DNA from: Octopus sinensis
Taxonomy: Eukaryota
NCBI RefSeq assembly: GCF_006345805.1
Contig: NC_043013.1
Span: 9,300,001-9,364,000 of the forward strand
Reading direction: 5' to 3'
Length of the DNA stretch: 64,000 nt
Shown: piece by piece, positions 15,973 through 63,383 of the stretch
How the letters are laid out: every line of letters starts with the position of its first letter
How positions within the stretch are numbered: position 1 is the first letter of the stretch
The notes under the pieces: generated by a model
Database searches by the model: none
Told to the model about the DNA's origin: nothing
Seen by the model: only the letters and a program-made list of their open reading frames with translations
Position numbers and translations under genes: made by a program

Positions 15973-16382
15973 GGATCTTTTCGGTTTGAACGGCAGTTTT
16001 TTAAAATAATTTCCACGTAACCAAACACTTTTAAACTTCGCAAACTGGTAGAATGTGTTTATAAAACATCTTTTTCTCTTGGCTTTATTGAGAAAAGTCT
16101 ATAATTTGTAAGATATTTGTTGTCTTTTTTCTTCAATTTCTGCAATTTCAACCAGTCAATGACGTCTATTGAGGTGAAAACATTCTGTGCCGTATGAATA
16201 TGTCCCTCGTTTAAGAAACAGATTGGATTTATTTACATTTCTGAAGAAAAAAAGATACCCTTCCCCCCACCCCAACCCTAAAACAGATTGAAATGCAATA
16301 GATCGATACTAGGGTCATAATTATGGGTGACAATTTCATATGACACTGCTAGAAAAAACTGCCGGTCAAACCAAAAGGATCC
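15973..16382. mobile_element. 410-bp MITE with GGATC termini and 8-bp TSD (AAATTTTC)
   Basis: ~29-bp TIRs GGATCTTTTCGGTTTGAACGGCAGTTTTT / AAAAACTGCCGGTCAAACCAAAAGGATCC; TSD at 15965-15972 and 16383-16390. Confidence 0.88.
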
Positions 16383-35896: not shown

Positions 35897-36671
35897 GCTA
35901 TTGTGTAGCACATACATTTGATCTCTATCAACAAATCATCTGTGCAGGTCGTTATGCATGAAATAGCAGAATCATTTTTCTTGGACTGCGAGAGACCACC
36001 ATCATACATATGTGTGTATCTATATGTATACGTACATGTTTTGTATGTATGTGTATATGTACATATATGTGTGTTAAAACCTCCCCACACACACATTGGT
36101 TGGTATTCAACTGTAGAAGCCATTCCAAGATTGAGATATTGGTGAGGAACATGGTCTTCTATTCCATTGGATCCTACTGGATCCGTCAATCCGTATCAAT
36201 GTAAAGAACAGACATAAAATGATAATGATATATATTTATTAACCCTTTTATTGCAAAACTTGGATATATCTACTCAAAATTCCATTAACCTTAACTGTGG
36301 GAAGCAGTTTTATATACCAGTGTATCCTTTGTGGCAGAATATCATGTTTGGAACTATTTTTTTTTTTGCTTTTATTATGTCAAGTTTATTGAGGTATCGA
36401 GACTTGTAGAAGATAGCAATCTATCTTTTTTTTTTTTTTTTATAGATGTTTAACATCGTTACTGGAATAACCACAAACTTTAATTTCACATTTAAACGGT
36501 TAATTTTAGGTGACAAAATTGCGAATCCTTTTTGTTACCTAAAGGATCAAACATAGTGAAAAAAATTCTAAGTAGTGATGGACTGATTCATCTTGGGTTC
36601 AAAGGAATAATTGCGCTTGAAAATTACTATTTTCAAATCTCACTTCGAGAGATATTCAGCAACAGTACTTC

Positions 36672-37017
36672 GGAGTAAAGATTGTTTGCCAACATGACAT
36701 GGGAGTCCTGGTTTAGGACGAATGTTGCTGTAATTTAGCCCCAAGAGACATCATCTCCAGCTGGCTATATGACATAATCTATGTCCTTATATTTTCGAAC
36801 AAGGGAATCTAGCACCCCAAATCAGCTCAAAACAATATCTGTGTATCACGATTTCCAGGTTATTTCCCTTCATCAGCACAGAATAATTGTTAAAAAATAT
36901 AAGGACACAGATCGTGTCGTATAGCCAGCTGGAGACGATGTTTTCTGGGACTAAATTACAGCAAGATTCGTCCTAAACCAGGACTGCCATGTTAAATTGG
37001 CAAACAATCTTTACTCC
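36672..37017. repeat. Fold-back element, ~124-bp arms, ~98-nt spacer containing a hammerhead motif
   Basis: GGAGTAAAGATTGTTTGCCAA...GTCCTTATATTTT mirrored at 36894-37017. Confidence 0.9.
36838..36882 (-). ncRNA. Hammerhead ribozyme-like motif in the spacer of a fold-back element
   Basis: Minus strand reads TCTGTG-CTGATGA-AGGGAAATAACCTG-GAAA-TCGTGA-TA^CACAGA: 6-bp stem I, exact core, self-complementary stem III (ATCGTGAT). Stem II is imperfect. Confidence 0.65.
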
Positions 37018-37370
37018 AATAAATGCGCTGTTCATGAATTGAGTACTATTTCTCTCGTTTGTGTATCTAGTATGTCTTATGTGTCTATCTATCTATCTAT
37101 CCACCTATCTTTTTTTTTTTCCAATATACAAGTTGACACAGTATATAGTGTAAACATATAATGTAAAAACATCCAAACATTGTCACTATCATTCTAAATT
37201 CTGCATTTCATGTGGAATATTTGCTCCTCTAAAGCTATCTCGGCGTATAAGTCAATATACCATTTTTGGCTATAAATTTTGGTCTGGAAAATTTGACTTA
37301 TATGCTGGAGAATATGTTAGCTACCTACCTACCTATCTACCCAACCCTTACACTGAACGCGAACGTGTAC

Positions 37371-43118: not shown

Positions 43119-43861
43119 ACTTCCATCACTGCTTGATGACTGGTGTTGGTTTGTTTATGTCCCTGTAACTTAGCGTTTCAGCAGAAAGTGCATGATAGAA
43201 TAAGTACCAGGCTTTAAAATGTGGTGTATTTTGTACTGTTTATACTTTGTACAACGAGACCTGAAACTATTATTTGTACGGGCATGGCTGTGTGGTAAGA
43301 AGGTTGCTTCCCAACCACATAATTCTAGGTTCAGTCACACTCTGTGGTCACCTTGTGTCTTCTACTATAGCTTCGGGCTGACCAAATCCTTGTGAATGGA
43401 TTTTGTAGATGGAAACAGAAAGAAGCCCATCATATGTATATATGTATGTATGTATGCATGCATGCATGTATGTCCTCCACCTCCACCACCACATCACAAC
43501 TGGTGTTGGTGTGTTTATGTCCTCATAACTAAGCAGTTTGGCAAAAGAGACCAACAGAATGAGTACCAGGCTTAAAAGAAAAAGAAGTACTGGTGTCGAT
43601 TCATTCTGCTAAAAATTCTTCAAGGCAGTGCCCCAGCCTGGCCACAGTCTATTGACTAAAACAAGTAAAAGACAAAAGATATTTTTTTCTTAATGTGTCT
43701 AGGCAGGTTCAGATGCAAAATATGCTGGTTGCCGTAGTGTATGTCACAGGTAAATCACATCTCTCATTTACAACAAGCGCATGTTCAACACCCTCAGCTC
43801 ATTGGTGCACCGCATTCTGGGTCAGTGGCATTTCGACATGTTGTGTCTCATCAGCCAAAAG

Positions 43862-58892: not shown

Positions 58893-59970
58893 TCACTTGT
58901 CCTGCCGGGTCTTCTCACGCACATCATGTTTCCATAGGTCTCGGTCTCTAGTCATTTCCTCGGTGAGACCTAAAGTTTGAAGGTCGTGCTTCACCACCTC
59001 GTCCCAGGTTTTCCTGGGTCTACCTCTTCCACAGGTTCCCTCAACCGCTAGGGTGTGGCACTTTTTCACACAACTATCTTCATCCATTCTCGCCACATGA
59101 CCATACCAGCGCAAACATCTCTCTTGCACACCACAACTGATGCTTCTTAGGTCTAATTTTTCTCTCAAAGAACTTACACTCTGTCGAGTATGAAGACTGA
59201 CATTACACATCCATCGGAGCATACTGGCTTCATTTCTTGCAAGCTTACGCATATCCTCAGCAGTCACGGCCCATGTTTCACTGCCATGTAGCATGGCTGT
59301 TCGTACACATGCGTCATACAATCTGCCTTTTACTCTCAGCGAGAGGCCTTTTGTCACCAGCAGAGGTAAGAGCTCTCTGAACTTTGCCCAGGCTATTCTT
59401 ACTCTAGCAGTTACACTTTCAGCGCACCCGCCCCCGTTACTGACTTGGTCACCTAGGTAACGGAAGCTATCAACTACTTCTAGTTTTTCTCCCTGGAATG
59501 TGGCGGAAGATGGTCTCTGCGTATTTTCAGTGTTTATTACTCCCGAGCATCTGCCATATATAAAAACTATTTTCCTAGTTAGCCTTCCTTTGACATTGCT
59601 GCACCTCTTATGTGTCCATAGCTTACACTTGGTGCATCTTATAGAGTTTCTACCTACGCCTTTTCTACAGATCGAGCAGGGCCATCTACCTGAATGTGTT
59701 TGTGATTTGTCTACCTTCCTACTTATTAGAATTTTGGTTTTAGCTAGGTTGACTCTTAGGCCCTTCGATTCTAATCCTTGCTTCCACACCTGAAACTTCT
59801 CCTCCAGTTCTGATAGTGACTCAGCAATTAGGGCAAGGTCATCAGCATAGAGGAGCTCCCAGGGGCAGCCTGTTTTGAATTCCTCCGTTATTGCTTGGAG
59901 GACTATGATAAATAGGAGGGGGCTGAGGACTGAACCTTGGTGGACCCCTACCTCTACCCCTACCCTTACC
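58893..59970 (-). mobile_element. 5'-truncated RTE-clade LINE, RT C-terminal half with internal PHD-like finger; frame still open
   Basis: VGVHQGSVLSPLLF, LLYADD, FRYLG, LRWYGHVARM, GRGRPRKTW motifs in the 58893-60089 ORF. The N-terminal YI/RE run of that ORF is a microsatellite artefact. Confidence 0.93.
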
Positions 59971-59992
59971 TCTCTCTCTCTATATATATATG

Positions 59993-60042
<50 letters not shown>

Positions 60043-60177
60043 GAGGGCATTATACATACATGCCAGACGGCATTATACATACATGCCAAACGCTAAGAGG
60101 GACAATCAGTCATTTCTACCAAAAATATTACTAATCCCACCGAATGCAATTTTTCAAAGTAAGACATTTAAAAATAT

Positions 60178-60225
60178 AGACCTGTATCACAGTGATTTCA
60201 TACTTACGTAATCATCAGCAGGCCT
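60178..60225 (-). ncRNA. Minimal type I hammerhead ribozyme, monomer 1
   Basis: Minus strand reads AGGCCTG-CTGATGA-TTAC GTAA GTAT-GAAA-TCAC T GTGA-TA^CAGGTCT: 7-bp stem I, exact CUGAUGA and GAAA core, GUAA-capped stem II, palindromic stem III, AUA cleavage triplet. Confidence 0.85.
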
Positions 60226-60656
60226 GAATGTATTATAAATAAACAACGACCCTGTCCCGCTTAAGCCGATCAGCTAATTGATCAACATCAACGAAGCACA
60301 TGGGTGAGTTTACATATATTACATCCGGGTAAGTGGCAAACTTTTACGAATTGCATTTCGGGAGAGGAAAAGTTTTTTCGGAATAAAAATTTAGCAATTA
60401 AGGACAACTACTTAATAAGGAAAACTTAACAAGAAATTGTCAGGTAGATAGCGTAAAAACCTCATAAGAGAAAAAATTTCGAAAATAATTATTTCTTATT
60501 GAACATATTAATTTATATATAGAGGGCATTATACATACATGCCAGACGGCATTATACATACATGCCAAACGCTAAGAGGGACAATCAGTCATTTCTACCA
60601 AAAATATTACTAATCCCACCGAATGCAATTTTTCAAAGTAAGACATTTAAAAATAT

Positions 60657-60704
60657 AGACCTGTATCACAGTGATTTCATACTTACGTAATCATCAGCAG
60701 GCCT
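60657..60704 (-). ncRNA. Minimal type I hammerhead ribozyme, monomer 2
   Basis: Identical to the monomer 1 motif, shifted by 479 bp. Confidence 0.85.
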
Positions 60705-61134
60705 GAATGTATTATAAATAAACAACGACCCTGCCCCGCTTAAGCCGATCAGCTAACTGATCAACATCAACGAAGCACATGGGTGAGTTTACATATATTA
60801 CATCCGGGTAAGTGGCAAACTTTTACGAATTGCATTTCGGGAGAGGAAAAGTTTTTTCGGAATAAAAATTTAGCAATTAAGGACAACTACTTAATAAGGA
60901 AAACTTAACAAGAAATTGTCAGGTAGATAGCGTAAAAACCTCATAAGAGAAAAAATTTCGAAAATAATTATTTCTTATTGAACATATTAATTTATATATA
61001 GAGGGCATTATACATACATGCCAGACGGCATTATACATACATGCCAAACGCTAAGAGGGACAATCAGTCATTTCTACCAAAAATATACTAATCCCACCGA
61101 ATGCAATTTTTCAAAGTAAGACATTTAAAAATAT

Positions 61135-61181
61135 AGACCTGTATCCAGTGATTTCATACTTACGTAATCATCAGCAGGCCT
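61135..61181 (-). ncRNA. Minimal type I hammerhead ribozyme, monomer 3 (1-nt deletion in stem III)
   Basis: Same core, but stem III reads TCACTGGA instead of TCACTGTGA. Could be a real variant or a sequencing indel. Confidence 0.7.
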
Positions 61182-61474
61182 GAATGTATTATAAATAAAC
61201 AACGACCCTGCCCCGCTTAAGCCGATCAGCTAACTGATCAACATCAACGAAGCACATGGGTGAGTTTACATATATTACATCCGGGTAAGTGGCAAACTTT
61301 TACGAATTGCATTTCGGGAGAGGAAAAGTTTTTTCGGAATAAAAATTTAGCAATTAAGGACAACTACTTAATAAGGAAAACTTAACAAGAAATTGTCAGG
61401 TAGATAGCGTAAAAATCTCATAAGAGAAAAAATTTCGAAAATAATTATTTCTTATTGAACATATTAATTTATAT

Positions 61475-62871
61475 CATCATCATCATCATCATCATTTAGC
61501 GTCCGTTTTCCATGCTAGCATGGGTTGGACGGTTCAACTGGGGTCTGGGGAGCCCGAAGGCTGCACCAGGCCAGTCAGATCTGGCAGTGTTTCTACAGCT
61601 GGATGCCCTTCCTAACGCCAACCACTCCGAGAGTGTAGTGGGTGATTTTATGTGCCACCGACACAGGTGCCAGACGAGGCTGGCGAACGGCCACGCTCGG
61701 ATGGTGTTTTTATGTGCCACCGACACAGGTGCCAGACGAGGCTGGCAGACGGCCACGCTCGGATGGTGTTTTTATGTGCCACCGACACAGGTGCCAGATG
61801 AGGCTGGCAGACGGCCACGCTCGGATGGTGTTTTTATGTGCCACCGACACAGGTGCCAGATGAGGCTGGCGGACGGCCACGATCGGATGGTGTTTGTTAC
61901 GTCCCCAAAGCACGGAGGCCAGTCTATGCGGTACTGGCTACGGCCACGTTCGGATGATTTTCTTGTGTGCCACCGGCACTGGTACCACAAAGATACAAAT
62001 TCCATTTATGTTCATCTATTTTGATTTGTTTTGATTTGATTTGATTTGATTTTCACTTGCCTCAACAGGTCTTCACAAGTGTCACAAGAAGGAAGGTATG
62101 CACAGGTGGACTGTCTACGTCGCCGGGTCTTCGGATGGTGTCTTTATGTGCCACCGACACAGGTGCCAGATGTGGCTGGCGAACGGCCACGATCGGATGG
62201 TTTTCTTGTGTGCCACCGGTACTGGAACCACAAAGATACAAATTCCATTGATGTTCGTCTATTTTGATTTGGTTTGATTTTCACTTGCCTCAACAGGTCT
62301 TCACAAGTGTCACGCGTGTCACACACTTGCCTCAACAGGTCTCCACAAGTGTCACACACTTGCCTCTGCCTCAACAGGTCTTCACAAGTGTCACACACTT
62401 GCCTCTGCCTCAACAGGTCTTCACAAGTATCATAAGAGGGAAGGTATGCACAGGTGGACTGACTACGTCGCGGGTCTTTGGATGGTGTTTTTATGTGCCA
62501 CCGACACAGGTGCCAGGTGAGGCTGGCGAACGGCCACGATCAGATGGTGTTTGTTGTGCCCATAGCACGGAGGCCAGTCGATGCGGTACCAGCTACGGCC
62601 ACGTTCGGATGGTTTTCTTGTGTGCCACCGGTACTGGAACCACAAAGATACAAATTCCATTGATATTCATCTATTTTGATTTGGTTTGATTTGATTTTCA
62701 CTTGCCTCAACAGGTCTTCACAAGGGTCACACACTTGCCTCAACAGGTCTCCACAAGTGTCACACACTTGCCTCTGCCTCAACAGGTCTTCACAAGTGTC
62801 ACACACTTGCCTCAACAGGTCTTCACAAGTGTCATAAGAGGGAAGGTATGCACAGGTGGACTGACTACGTC
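61475..62871 (-). mobile_element. RTE LINE 3' UTR fragment with expanded internal VNTRs, (GAT)n tail and TATAT target duplication
   Basis: (CAT)n at 61475, conserved CAGCTGGATGCCCTTCCTAACGCCAACCACT block, 62-bp unit x4 (61650-61897), repeated ~31-37-bp units (62055-62835), TATAT at 61470-61474 and 62872-62876. Confidence 0.8.
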
Positions 62872-62876
62872 TATAT

Positions 62877-63124
62877 ATAGAGAAAAATTGCATTCGGTGG
62901 GATTAGTAATATTTTTGGTAGAAATGACTGATTGTCCCTCTTAGCGTTTGGCATGTATGTATAATGCCGTCTGGCATGTATGTATAATGCCCTCTATATA
63001 TAAATTAATATGTTCAATAAGAAATAATTATTTTCGAAATTTTTTCTCTTATGAGGTTTTTACGCTATCTACCTGACAATTTCTTGTTAAGTTTTCCTTA
63101 TTAAGTAGTTGTCCTTAATTGCTA
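62877..63124 (+). mobile_element. Inverted partial copy of the 479-bp monomer spanning the monomer-monomer junction
   Basis: Its reverse complement matches the last ~125 nt of a monomer followed by the first ~120 nt of the next; it ends in (TA)n. Confidence 0.85.
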
Positions 63125-63149
63125 TATATATATATATTATATATATATA

Positions 63150-63181
<32 letters not shown>

Positions 63182-63190
63182 GTCTATATA

Positions 63191-63383
63191 TATAAGCAAT
63201 AATAAATCTTAGAGCGAGTTATAAACAGTAGCTGCAACACATCATGACGTATATTTGCCATTTAAATATGGCTAACCCCTAAGGGTGGATGCTACTGTAG
63301 TTTGTAGCCCCAGGAGGACATATACGTCATGATGTGTTGCAGCTATTGTTTACAACTCACTTTAAGATTTATTATTGCTTATA
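63191..63383. repeat. Inverted repeat, 64-bp arms, 65-bp spacer, in (TA)n
   Basis: TATAAGCAATAATAAATCTTA...CATGACGTATAT mirrored at 63320-63383. Confidence 0.9.

What the first reader, a model, noticed from the sequence alone, without database searches (positions are those of the whole stretch)
60035..61474. 479-bp tandem array with a dimer-type hammerhead ribozyme in every monomer (retrozyme-like element)
Seen: three head-to-tail 479-bp monomers differing by only a few bases. Each contains, on the minus strand, stem I AGGCCUG/CAGGUCU (7 bp, one G-U), the exact CUGAUGA and GAAA core, stem II UAC-GUAA-GUA with a U.U pair at 10.1/11.1, and stem III AUCAC-U-GUGAU with an AUA cleavage triplet (predicted cut between 60185/60184 and 60664/60663). 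Established: minimal type I hammerheads with short palindromic stem III occur in Penelope-like element pseudo-LTRs, newt satellite 2-type repeats and metazoan tandem retrozymes, and are thought to cleave as double hammerheads that release monomers able to circularise. Inference: a transcript of this array would be cut into 479-nt monomers, possibly circRNA copied in trans by a Penelope-type RT. Stem III of two monomers can pair over 10 bp with one central U.U. The U10.1.U11.1 pair and AUA site are less common variants. I cannot tell whether this cephalopod family is already described.
Basis: partly seen in the sequence, partly recalled or inferred. Interest (0 to 1): 0.92.

Follow-up and report, generated by a model that had tools for sequence, protein, structure and literature searches.

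The report
Octopus tandem repeat with dimer-type hammerhead
A 479-bp repeat in an Octopus genome carries a self-cleaving hammerhead ribozyme motif built to work in pairs, so it looks like a new cephalopod member of the known "retrozyme" class of small ribozyme-bearing mobile repeats; whether it actually cleaves, forms RNA circles or moves is untested.

Summary
TRF finds a 479-bp unit repeated 3.0 times at 60032-61474, 99% identical. Every unit has a complete type I hammerhead (HHR) core on the minus strand, with the predicted cut at 60185/60184 and 60664/60663. Correction: unit 3 is 477 bp, and a 1-nt deletion breaks its helix III palindrome.

In a transcript carrying two HHRs, the minimum-energy fold is the textbook double hammerhead. 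The U.U pair at the base of helix II has a tested precedent in axolotl retrozyme HHR_Amex2. AUA is a natural cleavage triplet.

- an 11-nt stub of a fourth unit;
- a later SINE-like insertion (61475-62871, TATAT duplication);
- a 243-bp inverted partial unit (62882-63124), identical to unit 2.

The whole block lies between two (TA)n tracts, head-to-head, as expected from twin-primed reverse transcription.

The host is Octopus. Against the interpretation: no Rfam hammerhead model matches; no second copy turned up in 163 kb of other O. vulgaris DNA; the window holds no Penelope-like element; cleavage, circles and mobility are untested.

Verdict: a new member of a known kind (metazoan non-LTR retrozyme or HHR satellite), not described for cephalopods in the searchable literature. 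Interest is moderate.

The parts
59981..60034 (.). Left (TA)n microsatellite abutting the array; presumed half of the target site
   Evidence: TRF period 2 at 59981-60042; junction sequence
60035..60513 (-). Unit 1 (479 bp); the ribozyme-sense strand is the minus strand
60514..60992 (-). Unit 2 (479 bp); matches the majority base wherever the units differ
60993..61469 (-). Unit 3 (477 bp): two 1-nt deletions and one substitution relative to unit 2
60178..60225 (-). Hammerhead 1: helix I 60225-60219 / 60184-60178; CUGAUGA 60218-60212; helix II plus GUAA loop 60211-60200; GAA 60199-60197; helix III 60196-60186; A17 60185; predicted cut 60185|60184
60657..60704 (-). Hammerhead 2, identical to hammerhead 1; predicted cut 60664|60663
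61135..61181 (-). Hammerhead 3: core and helices I and II intact; helix III reads AUCACUGGAU (1-nt deletion, palindrome lost)
61470..61474 (-). First 5 nt (TATAT) of a fourth-unit stub; also the left copy of the target-site duplication made by the SINE-like insertion
   Evidence: joining ...61474 to 62877... restores the unit junction AATTTATATATAGAG
61475..62871 (-). Later insertion, not part of the element: a SINE-like repeat with a (CAT)7 end (its (ATG)n 3' tail on the minus strand), 5'-truncated at about 62871
   Evidence: at least 20 copies with the same (CAT)n-TTTAACGTCCG... end in the window; internal tandem sub-repeats
62872..62882 (-). Rest of the fourth-unit stub (unit positions 1-11, TATATATAGAG); 62872-62876 is the right TATAT duplication; G62882 is shared with the inverted copy (1-nt overlap)
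62882..63124 (+). Inverted partial unit (unit positions 358-479 and 1-121, 243 bp), 100% identical to unit 2 and lacking the hammerhead; its ribozyme-sense strand is the plus strand, so it lies head-to-head with the array
63125..63194 (.). Right (TA)n microsatellite abutting the inverted copy; presumed other half of the target site
   Evidence: TRF period 2 at 63123-63194

Best explanation
This is a retrozyme-type element of an Octopus genome: a small, AT-rich, non-coding 479-bp unit in head-to-tail copies, each carrying a type I hammerhead ribozyme on the minus strand.

Proposed mechanism, with each step marked:
1. The array is transcribed in minus sense. (Inferred.)
2. Hammerhead sequences of neighbouring units pair through their palindromic helix III (AUCAC-U-GUGAU) and swap helix I strands. 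This forms a double hammerhead. (Predicted by folding.)
3. Each active site cuts after the AUA, releasing 479-nt monomers with 5'-OH and 2',3'-cyclic phosphate ends. The two ends are held together by helix I. (Inferred from hammerhead chemistry.)
4. A host tRNA ligase of the RtcB type circularises the monomers. (Inferred from work on coral, mussel and axolotl retrozymes.)
5. A reverse transcriptase supplied in trans, most likely from a Penelope-like element, copies the circle or a multimer more than once round. The copy is inserted by target-primed reverse transcription into a (TA)n tract, with priming from both sides of the break. This gives the observed 3.02 direct units plus a head-to-head inverted partial unit. 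(Inferred from the locus architecture.)

The insertion is young. A SINE-like element has since landed in it.
For: Anatomy:
- The array has a 479-bp period, 3.0 copies, 99% identity.
- The hammerhead core is complete (C3 U4 G5 A6 U7 G8 A9, G12 A13 A14, A15.1-U16.1, A17). Helix I is 7 bp. Helix II is 3 Watson-Crick pairs plus U.U, capped by a GNRA loop. Helix III is palindromic.
- Chance gives 0.04 relaxed hits per shuffled window, and 0 strict hits in 40 Mb of random sequence.

Folding:
- Two HHR domains cofold into the double hammerhead at -28.3 kcal/mol, against 2 x -10.3 for separate monomers. The single active fold (-8.3) is not the monomer's minimum-energy structure.
- In a 566-nt transcript with two HHRs the minimum-energy structure is the double hammerhead. 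Inter-copy helix I has probability about 0.95, helix III about 0.26 and helix II about 0.19.
- The cleaved monomer folds with helix I closing the molecule: -123 kcal/mol, z = -4.5, 64% of bases paired. The antisense strand gives -99 kcal/mol, z = -4.0.

Class features:
- GC is 33.6%. The longest ORF is 42 aa.
- Published retrozymes are tandem repeats of 150-450 bp with GC below 50%. Family consensus lengths run 51-972 bp, and 75% of families reach at most 7 units.

Precedents:
[quoted passage not shown] It cleaves 22% per hour as a monomer and much better in dimeric constructs.
- AUA is the natural site of ELVd(+), sCYDV-RPV(+) and csc RNA(-).

Architecture:
- (TA)n tracts flank both sides.
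- Removing the SINE-like insertion and one TATAT copy restores the unit junction.
- The inverted 243-bp copy is 100% identical to unit 2 and lies head-to-head, so both ribozyme-sense 3' ends face the (TA)n tracts.
- The same head-to-head, (TA)n-flanked layout occurs for an unrelated min-HHR pair at L003:16077-16280 in O. vulgaris.
- Penelope-like elements (PLEs) are described as preferring (TA)n and as carrying an inverted 5'-truncated copy upstream.
- O. vulgaris carries PLEs, with 31 families and 336 copies in the table.
Against: - No Rfam hammerhead model matches. This holds at gathering score, at E<=10 on 1.7 kb, and on an 86-nt slice.
- A covariance model built from four experimentally validated retrozyme hammerheads ranks the three copies among the window's top four hits. 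But they score only 13.5 bits (E about 0.13), level with a non-hammerhead hit at 43815-43860.
- The G10.1-C11.1 pair, called highly conserved in PLE and canonical hammerheads, is replaced by U.U. The rest of helix II is only 3 pairs.
- I identified no loop 1 / loop 2 tertiary contact.
- One of three copies has lost the helix III palindrome.
- Only this locus is known. There is no other copy in the window or in 163 kb of other O. vulgaris DNA. There is no match in the metagenome, viral or prokaryote collections, although those are not expected to hold octopus DNA.
- ORFs of at least 72 aa in the window contain no GIY-YIG domain and no PLE-type RT.
- (TA)n flanks are weak evidence here, because the abundant SINE-like family also sits next to (TA)n.
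- There are no expression data.
Confidence: 0.68

Rival explanations
1. It is an ordinary local tandem duplication or satellite that happens to contain a hammerhead-like string. It is not a ribozyme or a mobile element; the copies arose by unequal crossing-over and the inverted piece by a DNA-level rearrangement.
For: No Rfam hammerhead hit. My own covariance-model score is marginal. There is U.U instead of G10.1-C11.1. Only a single locus is known. By extrapolation from 8 hits in 40 Mb, relaxed descriptors would give on the order of a thousand chance hits in a 2.8-Gb genome.
Against: The actual motif is far stricter than the relaxed descriptor: 7-bp helix I, a GNRA-capped helix II and a 5+5 palindromic helix III. 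Nothing with helix I >=6 bp and helix III >=3 bp appeared in 40 Mb, and extrapolation gives only a few per genome. It also sits exactly where a retrozyme hammerhead should, once per unit of a tandem repeat of the right size and GC content. The double hammerhead is the minimum-energy fold in context. Both outer ends lie in (TA)n, with a head-to-head inverted copy identical to unit 2. That pattern is what twin-primed reverse transcription leaves, and unequal crossing-over does not produce it.
Confidence: 0.1
2. It is not an independent small element. It is debris of an autonomous Penelope-like element: tandemly repeated pseudo-LTRs left after loss of the RT/GIY-YIG ORF.
For: PLE pseudo-LTRs carry hammerheads and PLE insertions are tandem or inverted and prefer (TA)n. 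Retrozymes are reported to be sister to PLE pseudo-LTRs in Xenopus. O. vulgaris has PLEs.
Against: There are three contiguous complete units with nothing between them. No RT or GIY-YIG ORF lies near the array, and the only RVT_1 hits in the window are two LINE fragments. Hammerhead dimensions (helix I 7 bp, helix II 4 positions, a real helix III) are those of canonical retrozyme hammerheads. They do not fit the PLE min-HHR, which has helix I of 4-5 bp, helix II of 7-8 bp and no helix III. If retrozymes are defined as non-autonomous PLE derivatives, as, this rival merges with the best explanation.
Confidence: 0.12
3. It is a hammerhead-bearing element mobilised by LINE machinery, like the SINE-like Sm-alpha of Schistosoma, and then amplified locally.
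For: A 5'-truncated LINE RT fragment lies next to the array (58893-59950). Twin priming is best documented for LINEs (my own knowledge). LINEs and SINEs dominate Octopus repeats.
Against: The element has no poly(A) or (ATG)n-type 3' tail. It has no tRNA or 5S-like head (no Rfam hit). More-than-unit-length tandem copies are not a LINE/SINE signature. The neighbouring LINE is separated from the array by the (TA)n tract and shows no connection to it.
Confidence: 0.05
4. It is an assembly artefact: a single copy laid down three times.
For: None directly. The copies are 99% identical, and no reads are available.
Against: The units differ at five positions. The array ends in a fourth-unit stub interrupted by a SINE-like insertion with a clean TATAT duplication, and it continues into an inverted partial copy. 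That is a coherent biological structure.
Confidence: 0.03

Closest known systems
Metazoan non-LTR retrozymes (Cervera & de la Pena 2020, PMC7229834), especially axolotl Rtz_353 with HHR_Amex2 and the mussel Mytilus galloprovincialis retrozyme
   Same: Both are head-to-tail repeats of a few hundred bp with one type I hammerhead per unit. Both have low GC, no ORF, LTR, PBS or PPT, and a self-paired RNA. HHR_Amex2 shares the U.U mismatch at the base of helix II, a palindromic helix III, an A at position 17 and better cleavage as a dimer. The mussel shows that the class exists in molluscs.
   Different: At 479 bp the unit is above the 170-400 nt range reported for invertebrates, though inside the 51-972 bp range later reported. 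Helix II is A/U-rich (UAC/GUA) with a GUAA loop. No loop-loop tertiary contact is recognisable. Only one locus is known, against thousands of copies in the published cases. Expression and circles are not shown. There is no sequence similarity to the published units beyond the core.
Newt/salamander satellite 2 hammerheads and the double-hammerhead mechanism (Epstein & Gall 1987; Forster et al. 1988, as summarised in PMC6155905 and PMC4209133)
   Same: Both are satellite-type tandem repeats whose type I hammerhead has a palindromic helix III, so two tandem copies form an extended helix III and cleave as a dimer. The same topology is the predicted minimum-energy fold here.
   Different: Helix III here is longer: 4 bp plus a triloop as a hairpin, or 5+5 bp around a U.U as a dimer, against 1-2 bp plus a tetraloop in amphibians. 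The base of helix II is non-canonical. The host phylum differs.
Minimal hammerheads of Penelope-like element pseudo-LTRs (Cervera & de la Pena 2014, PMC4209133)
   Same: Both have type I topology, a palindromic 15.x/16.x region, likely dimer action and a possible extra nucleotide after A9. Both associate with tandem or inverted insertions, and PLEs prefer (TA)n. A true PLE-type min-HHR pair with the same head-to-head, (TA)n-flanked layout exists in O. vulgaris at L003:16077-16280.
   Different: PLE min-HHRs have helix I of 4-5 bp, helix II of 7-8 bp, a conserved G10.1-C11.1 pair and no helix III. They flank an RT/GIY-YIG ORF. None of these holds here.
pDo500 satellite of Dolichopoda cave crickets (PMC2837043)
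   Same: It is a roughly 500-bp satellite unit with one hammerhead per unit. Single and double hammerhead folds have been discussed for it, and it shows natural variation at 10.1/11.1 and a U-U pair in a stem.
   Different: It is an insect family with many sequenced copies and documented compensatory changes. Here there are three near-identical copies and no comparative data.

Membership tests
Hammerhead ribozyme, type I | Conserved catalytic core: C3 U4 G5 A6 N7 G8 A9, G12 A13 A14, A15.1-U16.1 pair, H17 (not G) | tested here: met
   CUGAUGA ... GAA-A...U-A is present in all three units on the minus strand.
Hammerhead ribozyme, type I | Three helices around the core, with helix I open and helices II and III closed | tested here: met
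   Helix I is 7 bp with one G.U. Helix II is U.U plus 3 bp plus a GUAA loop. Helix III is AUCA-CUG-UGAU as a hairpin, or 5+5 bp between copies.
Hammerhead ribozyme, type I | G10.1-C11.1 pair at the base of helix II (quasi-conserved) | tested here: not met
   The pair is U10.1.U11.1. The published precedent with activity is axolotl HHR_Amex2.
Hammerhead ribozyme, type I | Loop 1 / loop 2 tertiary contacts of full-length natural hammerheads | tested here: inconclusive
   Loop 2 is a GNRA tetraloop. Beyond the 7-bp helix I the fold opens into a large interior region with no recognisable loop 1. The mussel retrozyme hammerheads also lack most of the canonical contacts.
Hammerhead ribozyme, type I | Match to the Rfam hammerhead covariance models at gathering score | tested here: not met
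   No hammerhead family is listed at gathering score, at E<=10 over 59900-61600 or over 60160-60245.
Hammerhead ribozyme, type I | Match to a covariance model of experimentally validated retrozyme hammerheads (coral, mussel, Ax353, Ax330) | tested here: inconclusive
   The three copies are among the window's top four hits, but at 13.5-13.6 bits (E about 0.13). A non-hammerhead hit scores 13.2 bits.
Hammerhead ribozyme, type I | Mg2+-dependent site-specific self-cleavage | not testable with these tools
   This needs in vitro transcription of monomer and dimer constructs.
Dimer-type (double) hammerhead | Palindromic helix III that lets two copies form an extended inter-copy helix III, with this fold favoured over single hammerheads | tested here: met
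   The cofold minimum-energy structure is the double hammerhead at -28.3 kcal/mol, against 2 x -10.3. It is also the minimum-energy structure of a 566-nt transcript with two HHRs. Unit 3 has lost the palindrome.
Metazoan non-LTR retrozyme | Head-to-tail tandem repeat of a few hundred bp with one type I hammerhead per unit | tested here: met
   The array is 479 bp x 3.02. Published ranges are 150-450 bp and 51-972 bp.
Metazoan non-LTR retrozyme | Low GC content (below 45-50%) | tested here: met
   33.6%.
Metazoan non-LTR retrozyme | Non-coding; no LTR, PBS or PPT | tested here: met
   The longest ORF inside the array is 42 aa. It has no relatives in the protein collections. The units are contiguous, with no LTR-like internal structure. 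PBS and PPT were not searched for separately.
Metazoan non-LTR retrozyme | Stable, highly self-paired monomer RNA | tested here: met
   -123 kcal/mol, z = -4.5 against shuffles, 64% of bases paired, helix I closing the molecule. The antisense strand is also structured (z = -4.0), so this feature is weakly discriminating.
Metazoan non-LTR retrozyme | Dispersed multicopy family in the genome | tested here: inconclusive
   One array plus one inverted fragment are known. There is no copy elsewhere in the window or in 163 kb of O. vulgaris loci. The whole genome could not be searched with these tools.
Metazoan non-LTR retrozyme | Expressed as linear and circular monomer RNAs | not testable with these tools
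   No RNA data are reachable.
Metazoan non-LTR retrozyme | Co-occurrence with autonomous Penelope-like elements in the same genome | tested here: inconclusive
   The window's ORFs of at least 72 aa contain no PLE. The literature reports PLEs in O. vulgaris and other cephalopods. A PLE-type min-HHR pair lies at L003:16077-16280.
PLE pseudo-LTR min-HHR | Located in direct repeats flanking an RT/GIY-YIG ORF; helix I 4-5 bp, helix II 7-8 bp, no helix III | tested here: not met
   No such ORF is present. The helices are 7 bp, 4 positions and 4-5 bp.

The most novel reading that the evidence does not exclude
This may be a currently active cephalopod retrozyme lineage. The insertion looks roughly 1 My old or less. 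If minus-sense transcripts self-cleave as obligate double hammerheads despite the U.U base of helix II, they would accumulate as 479-nt circular RNAs in Octopus tissues. These would be the first ribozyme-derived circRNAs described in a cephalopod. The twin-primed, (TA)n-targeted insertion would also be a rare direct footprint of how retrozyme RNA is copied back into DNA.
Probability: 0.3. Interest if true: 0.55.

Novelty: new member of a known kind. Interest (0 to 1): 0.42.

Why it matters
Retrozymes and hammerhead satellites are known from cnidarians, mussels, insects, flatworms and amphibians. I found no description of one in a cephalopod. Octopus genomes are heavily studied for transposon activity.

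If the family is real and expressed, it would do three things:
- add a ribozyme-processed circular RNA to cephalopod RNA biology;
- provide a second, independent example of an active-type hammerhead with a U.U pair at 10.1/11.1;
- give an unusually legible insertion footprint, bearing on the unresolved question of which reverse transcriptase mobilises animal retrozymes and how. That footprint has more-than-unit length and (TA)n on both sides, with a head-to-head inverted copy whose polarity points to the ribozyme-sense RNA as the template.

It does not change the concept; it extends it.

Tried and rejected
1. Rfam at gathering score and at E<=10 on three region sizes. No hammerhead family matched; only AT-rich noise (miRNA, snoRNA) appeared.

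2. Looking for other copies by DNA pattern. A 27-mer of the hammerhead, a degenerate 34-mer and a 37-mer of the unit gave no match in the metagenome, viral or prokaryote contig collections. These collections are not expected to hold octopus DNA, so this says little.

3. Looking for copies through called ORFs. The 42-aa ORF has no relatives, and six array ORFs are not in the 15-billion-protein collection.

4. Sampling Octopus DNA through annotated proteins. Eight O. vulgaris loci (163 kb) hold no copy of the unit.

5. Searching the window for a Penelope-like element. Pfam on 150 ORFs of at least 72 aa gave only two LINE RT fragments and a PHD finger. I could not obtain an Octopus PLE for comparison of pseudo-LTRs.

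6. A covariance model from four validated retrozyme hammerheads. The ranking is right, but the scores are too low to count as proof.

7. The second hammerhead motif in the window (36882-36838) as independent support. I downgraded it. Its foldback arms are a multicopy family, but the 69-nt segment holding the motif is missing from the two other copies I could align.

8. (TA)n flanks as a PLE-specific signature. I weakened this, because the abundant SINE-like family also sits beside (TA)n.

9. The hit at 43815-43860. I rejected it as a hammerhead because it has no valid U16.1/H17 and lies inside a LINE ORF.
Full report
**Observation**

Tandem Repeats Finder reports one array at 60032-61474 with period 479, 3.0 copies and 99% matches. 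In my alignment the units are 60035-60513, 60514-60992 and 60993-61469. Unit 1 differs from unit 2 by two substitutions. Unit 3 differs from unit 2 by one substitution and two single-base deletions, so it is 477 bp.

The minus strand reads AGGCCUG CUGAUGA UUAC-GUAA-GUAU GAA AUCAC-U-GUGAU A CAGGUCU at 60225-60178 and 60704-60657.

One of unit 3's deletions lies in helix III (AUCACUGGAU, 61181-61135). That copy keeps the core, helix I, helix II and a 3-bp helix III, but it loses the palindrome.

**Is it more than chance?**

A descriptor scan required CUGANGA, helix II >=3 bp, GAA, A15.1-U16.1, helix III >=2 bp, H17 and helix I >=4 bp. It gives four hits in the window against 0.04 per shuffled window. 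In 40 Mb of first-order Markov sequence with the window's composition there were 8 relaxed hits, and none with helix I >=6 bp and helix III >=3 bp.

Extrapolating at about 0.375 per extra pair, a motif as strict as this one is expected only a few times in a 2.8-Gb genome. This is inference. It also falls once per unit of a tandem repeat.

**Folding**

- A single 48-nt domain does not prefer the active fold: -8.3 kcal/mol against a minimum of -10.3, in which U4-U7 pairs with 15.1-15.4.
- Two domains together fold into the classical double hammerhead at -28.3 kcal/mol. Helix III forms between copies (5 bp, U.U, 5 bp) and the helix I strands are swapped.
- In a 566-nt minus-sense transcript with two hammerheads around one unit, the minimum-energy structure is again the double hammerhead. 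Inter-copy helix I has probability about 0.95, helix III about 0.26 and helix II about 0.19.
- The cleaved 479-nt monomer folds at -123 kcal/mol (z = -4.5, 64% paired), with helix I joining its two ends.
- The antisense strand folds at -99 kcal/mol (z = -4.0). The strand asymmetry is modest.

**Curated and home-made models**

No Rfam hammerhead family matches at gathering score, at E<=10 over 1.7 kb, or over an 86-nt slice.

I built a covariance model from the four hammerheads printed in the supplement of PMC7229834: coral Amil224, mussel Mg353, and axolotl Ax353 and Ax330. With filters off, the three array copies are among the window's top four hits. They score only 13.5 bits (E about 0.13), and a non-hammerhead sequence at 43815-43860 scores 13.2. 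Model-based membership is therefore inconclusive. The case rests on the descriptor, the fold and the context.

- The array starts in a (TA)n tract (59981-60042).
- After unit 3 come TATAT, then (CAT)7 and 1.4 kb of another repeat.
- That repeat's (CAT)n-TTTAACGTCCG... end recurs at least 20 times in the window. It is therefore a SINE-like element whose minus-strand 3' tail is (ATG)n.
- It ends at about 62871 and is followed by TATATATAGAG. Joining 61474 to 62877 restores the unit junction AATTTATATATAGAG exactly. So it inserted, with a TATAT duplication, into an 11-nt stub of a fourth unit.
- The stub is joined, with a 1-nt overlap, to an inverted partial unit (62882-63124; unit positions 358-479 and 1-121). 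This copy is 100% identical to unit 2 and lacks the hammerhead.
- The inverted unit runs into a second (TA)n tract (63123-63194).

Before the SINE-like insertion the structure was: (TA)n, 3.02 direct units, a head-to-head inverted 0.5 unit, (TA)n.

In ribozyme sense, both 3' ends point outward into the (TA)n tracts. That is the footprint expected if both sides of a staggered break primed reverse transcription on one RNA (twin priming). It implies that the template had the ribozyme-sense polarity and was longer than one unit, either a circle copied round and round or an uncleaved multimer. All of this is inference.

Using the calibration quoted in PMC13282606 (JC distance 0.065 is about 18 My), the 0.4-0.6% differences between units suggest an age on the order of 1 My or less, unless gene conversion has homogenised them. 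This too is inference.

**Host and comparative sampling**

- The neighbouring LINE RT fragment is 85% identical to an Octopus vulgaris protein.
- An ORF of the SINE-like repeat hits only O. vulgaris and O. bimaculoides proteins.
- Eight O. vulgaris loci (163 kb, GCA_951406725.2) hold no copy of the 479-bp unit.
- They do hold other hammerhead elements. L003:16077-16280 is a 99-nt-arm inverted repeat whose arms each carry a PLE-type minimal hammerhead: helix I 4 bp, helix II >=7 bp, palindromic ACUA-U-UAGU. The arms are head-to-head between two (TA)n tracts. The two arm differences in helix II keep pairing as wobbles.
- L001:15896-16377 is an older inverted pair. Its helix III, AUCACGUGAU, is almost the array's.

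Counting the window's isolated second motif, three descriptor-positive loci in 227 kb compare with about 0.09 expected by chance. Hammerhead elements are therefore common in this genome, and two loci (the array and L003) share the head-to-head, (TA)n-flanked layout.

The window's ORFs of at least 72 aa contain no Penelope-like element. The literature reports PLEs, including recent families, in O. vulgaris and other cephalopods. It also describes PLE insertions as tandem or inverted with (TA)n preference. The SINE-like family also sits beside (TA)n, so the (TA)n flanks are suggestive, not specific.

**Comparison with what is known**

- Non-LTR retrozymes are tandem repeats of 150-450 bp with one type I hammerhead per unit. 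They have GC below 50%, no LTR, PBS or PPT, and self-paired RNAs found as linear and circular monomers. They co-occur with PLEs.
- A 2026 preprint gives consensus lengths of 51-972 bp, reports that most families have at most 7 units, and reports pseudo-LTR relatedness.
- The unit here is 479 bp x 3, has 33.6% GC and has no ORF above 42 aa.
Axolotl HHR_Amex2 (about 60,000 copies) has a U.U mismatch at the base of helix II. It cleaves 22% per hour as a monomer and much better as a dimer. AUA is the natural triplet of ELVd(+), sCYDV-RPV(+) and csc RNA(-), though it is slower than GUC.
- The hammerhead's proportions are those of canonical retrozyme hammerheads, not of PLE min-HHRs.
- The cave-cricket pDo500 satellite is a comparable unit of about 500 bp.

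**Verdict**

The most likely reading (about 0.68) is a retrozyme-type, hammerhead-bearing, non-autonomous repeat of Octopus that cleaves as a double hammerhead. It was inserted recently by reverse transcription into a (TA)n tract.

The rivals are:
- a chance motif in an ordinary duplication (0.10);
- pseudo-LTR debris of a PLE (0.12), which shades into the best explanation;
- LINE-mediated mobilisation (0.05);
- mis-assembly (0.03).

No paper in the searchable library describes hammerheads or retrozymes in cephalopods. It is a new member of a known kind, of moderate interest. Cleavage, circles, copy number and the identity of the reverse transcriptase all remain to be shown.

Noticed in passing
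window 36838-36882 (-), within 36435-37104: There is a second, unrelated type I hammerhead motif: UCUGUG CUGAUGA AGGGAAAUAACCUG GAA AUCGUGAU A CACAGA, with an AUA site and an A.G pair at 10.1/11.1. It lies between the 131-nt arms (88% complementary) of a foldback whose RNA would fold at -216 kcal/mol (z = -21). It is the best hit of my retrozyme-hammerhead model (19.3 bits, E 0.0024). The foldback arms are a multicopy Octopus family, but the 69-nt segment holding the motif is absent from the copies at L003:19436-19766 and L007:15162-15272. The element ends in a poly(A) run, with A-rich/GATAG direct repeats at both ends.
   Followed up: partly
window 61475-62871 (-), and at least 20 other sites, e.g. 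832, 11274, 25591, 35270, 39798: An abundant SINE-like family begins, in plus orientation, with (CAT)n followed by TTTAACGTCCGYTTTCCATGCTAGCATGGGTTGGACGG. The copy at 61475-62871 carries 62-bp and 33/39-bp internal tandem sub-repeats and interrupts the retrozyme-like array. Several copies lie directly next to (TA)n tracts.
   Followed up: partly
window 58893-59950 (-): A 5'-truncated non-LTR (LINE) reverse transcriptase fragment with a YADD motif and a C-terminal PHD finger. It is 85% identical to an O. vulgaris predicted protein, and hundreds of 45-55% relatives occur in metagenome-derived protein sets. It abuts the left (TA)n tract and has no evident link to the array.
   Followed up: partly
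L003:16077-16280 (O. vulgaris OX597839.1): A head-to-head inverted pair (99-nt arms, 91% complementary) of PLE-type minimal hammerheads: helix I 4 bp, helix II >=7 bp, palindromic helix III ACUA-U-UAGU, GUA site. It is inserted between two (TA)n tracts. Differences between the arms in helix II preserve pairing as G.U wobbles.
   Followed up: partly
L001:15896-16020 and 16255-16377 (O. vulgaris OX597814.1): An older inverted repeat (80% complementary) with a degenerate hammerhead-like motif in each arm. The right arm's helix III, AUCACGUGAU, is nearly the same as the array's AUCAC-U-GUGAU, but I detected no other similarity to the 479-bp unit.
   Followed up: no
window 43815-43860 (-): A hammerhead-like string (CUGAUGA GACA-CAACA-UGUC GAAA, 6-bp helix I) lies inside a LINE ORF. 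It lacks a valid U16.1/H17 and was judged a chance match, but it shows the noise level of the home-made model (13.2 bits).
   Followed up: yes
window 60510-60524 and the other unit junctions (-): On the ribozyme-sense strand each unit junction reads CUCUAUAUAUAAAUU. This contains a TATA-box-like TATATAAA and is also the point where the array meets the (TA)n tract. It could serve as an internal promoter element, as the microhomology used for priming, or as neither.
   Followed up: no
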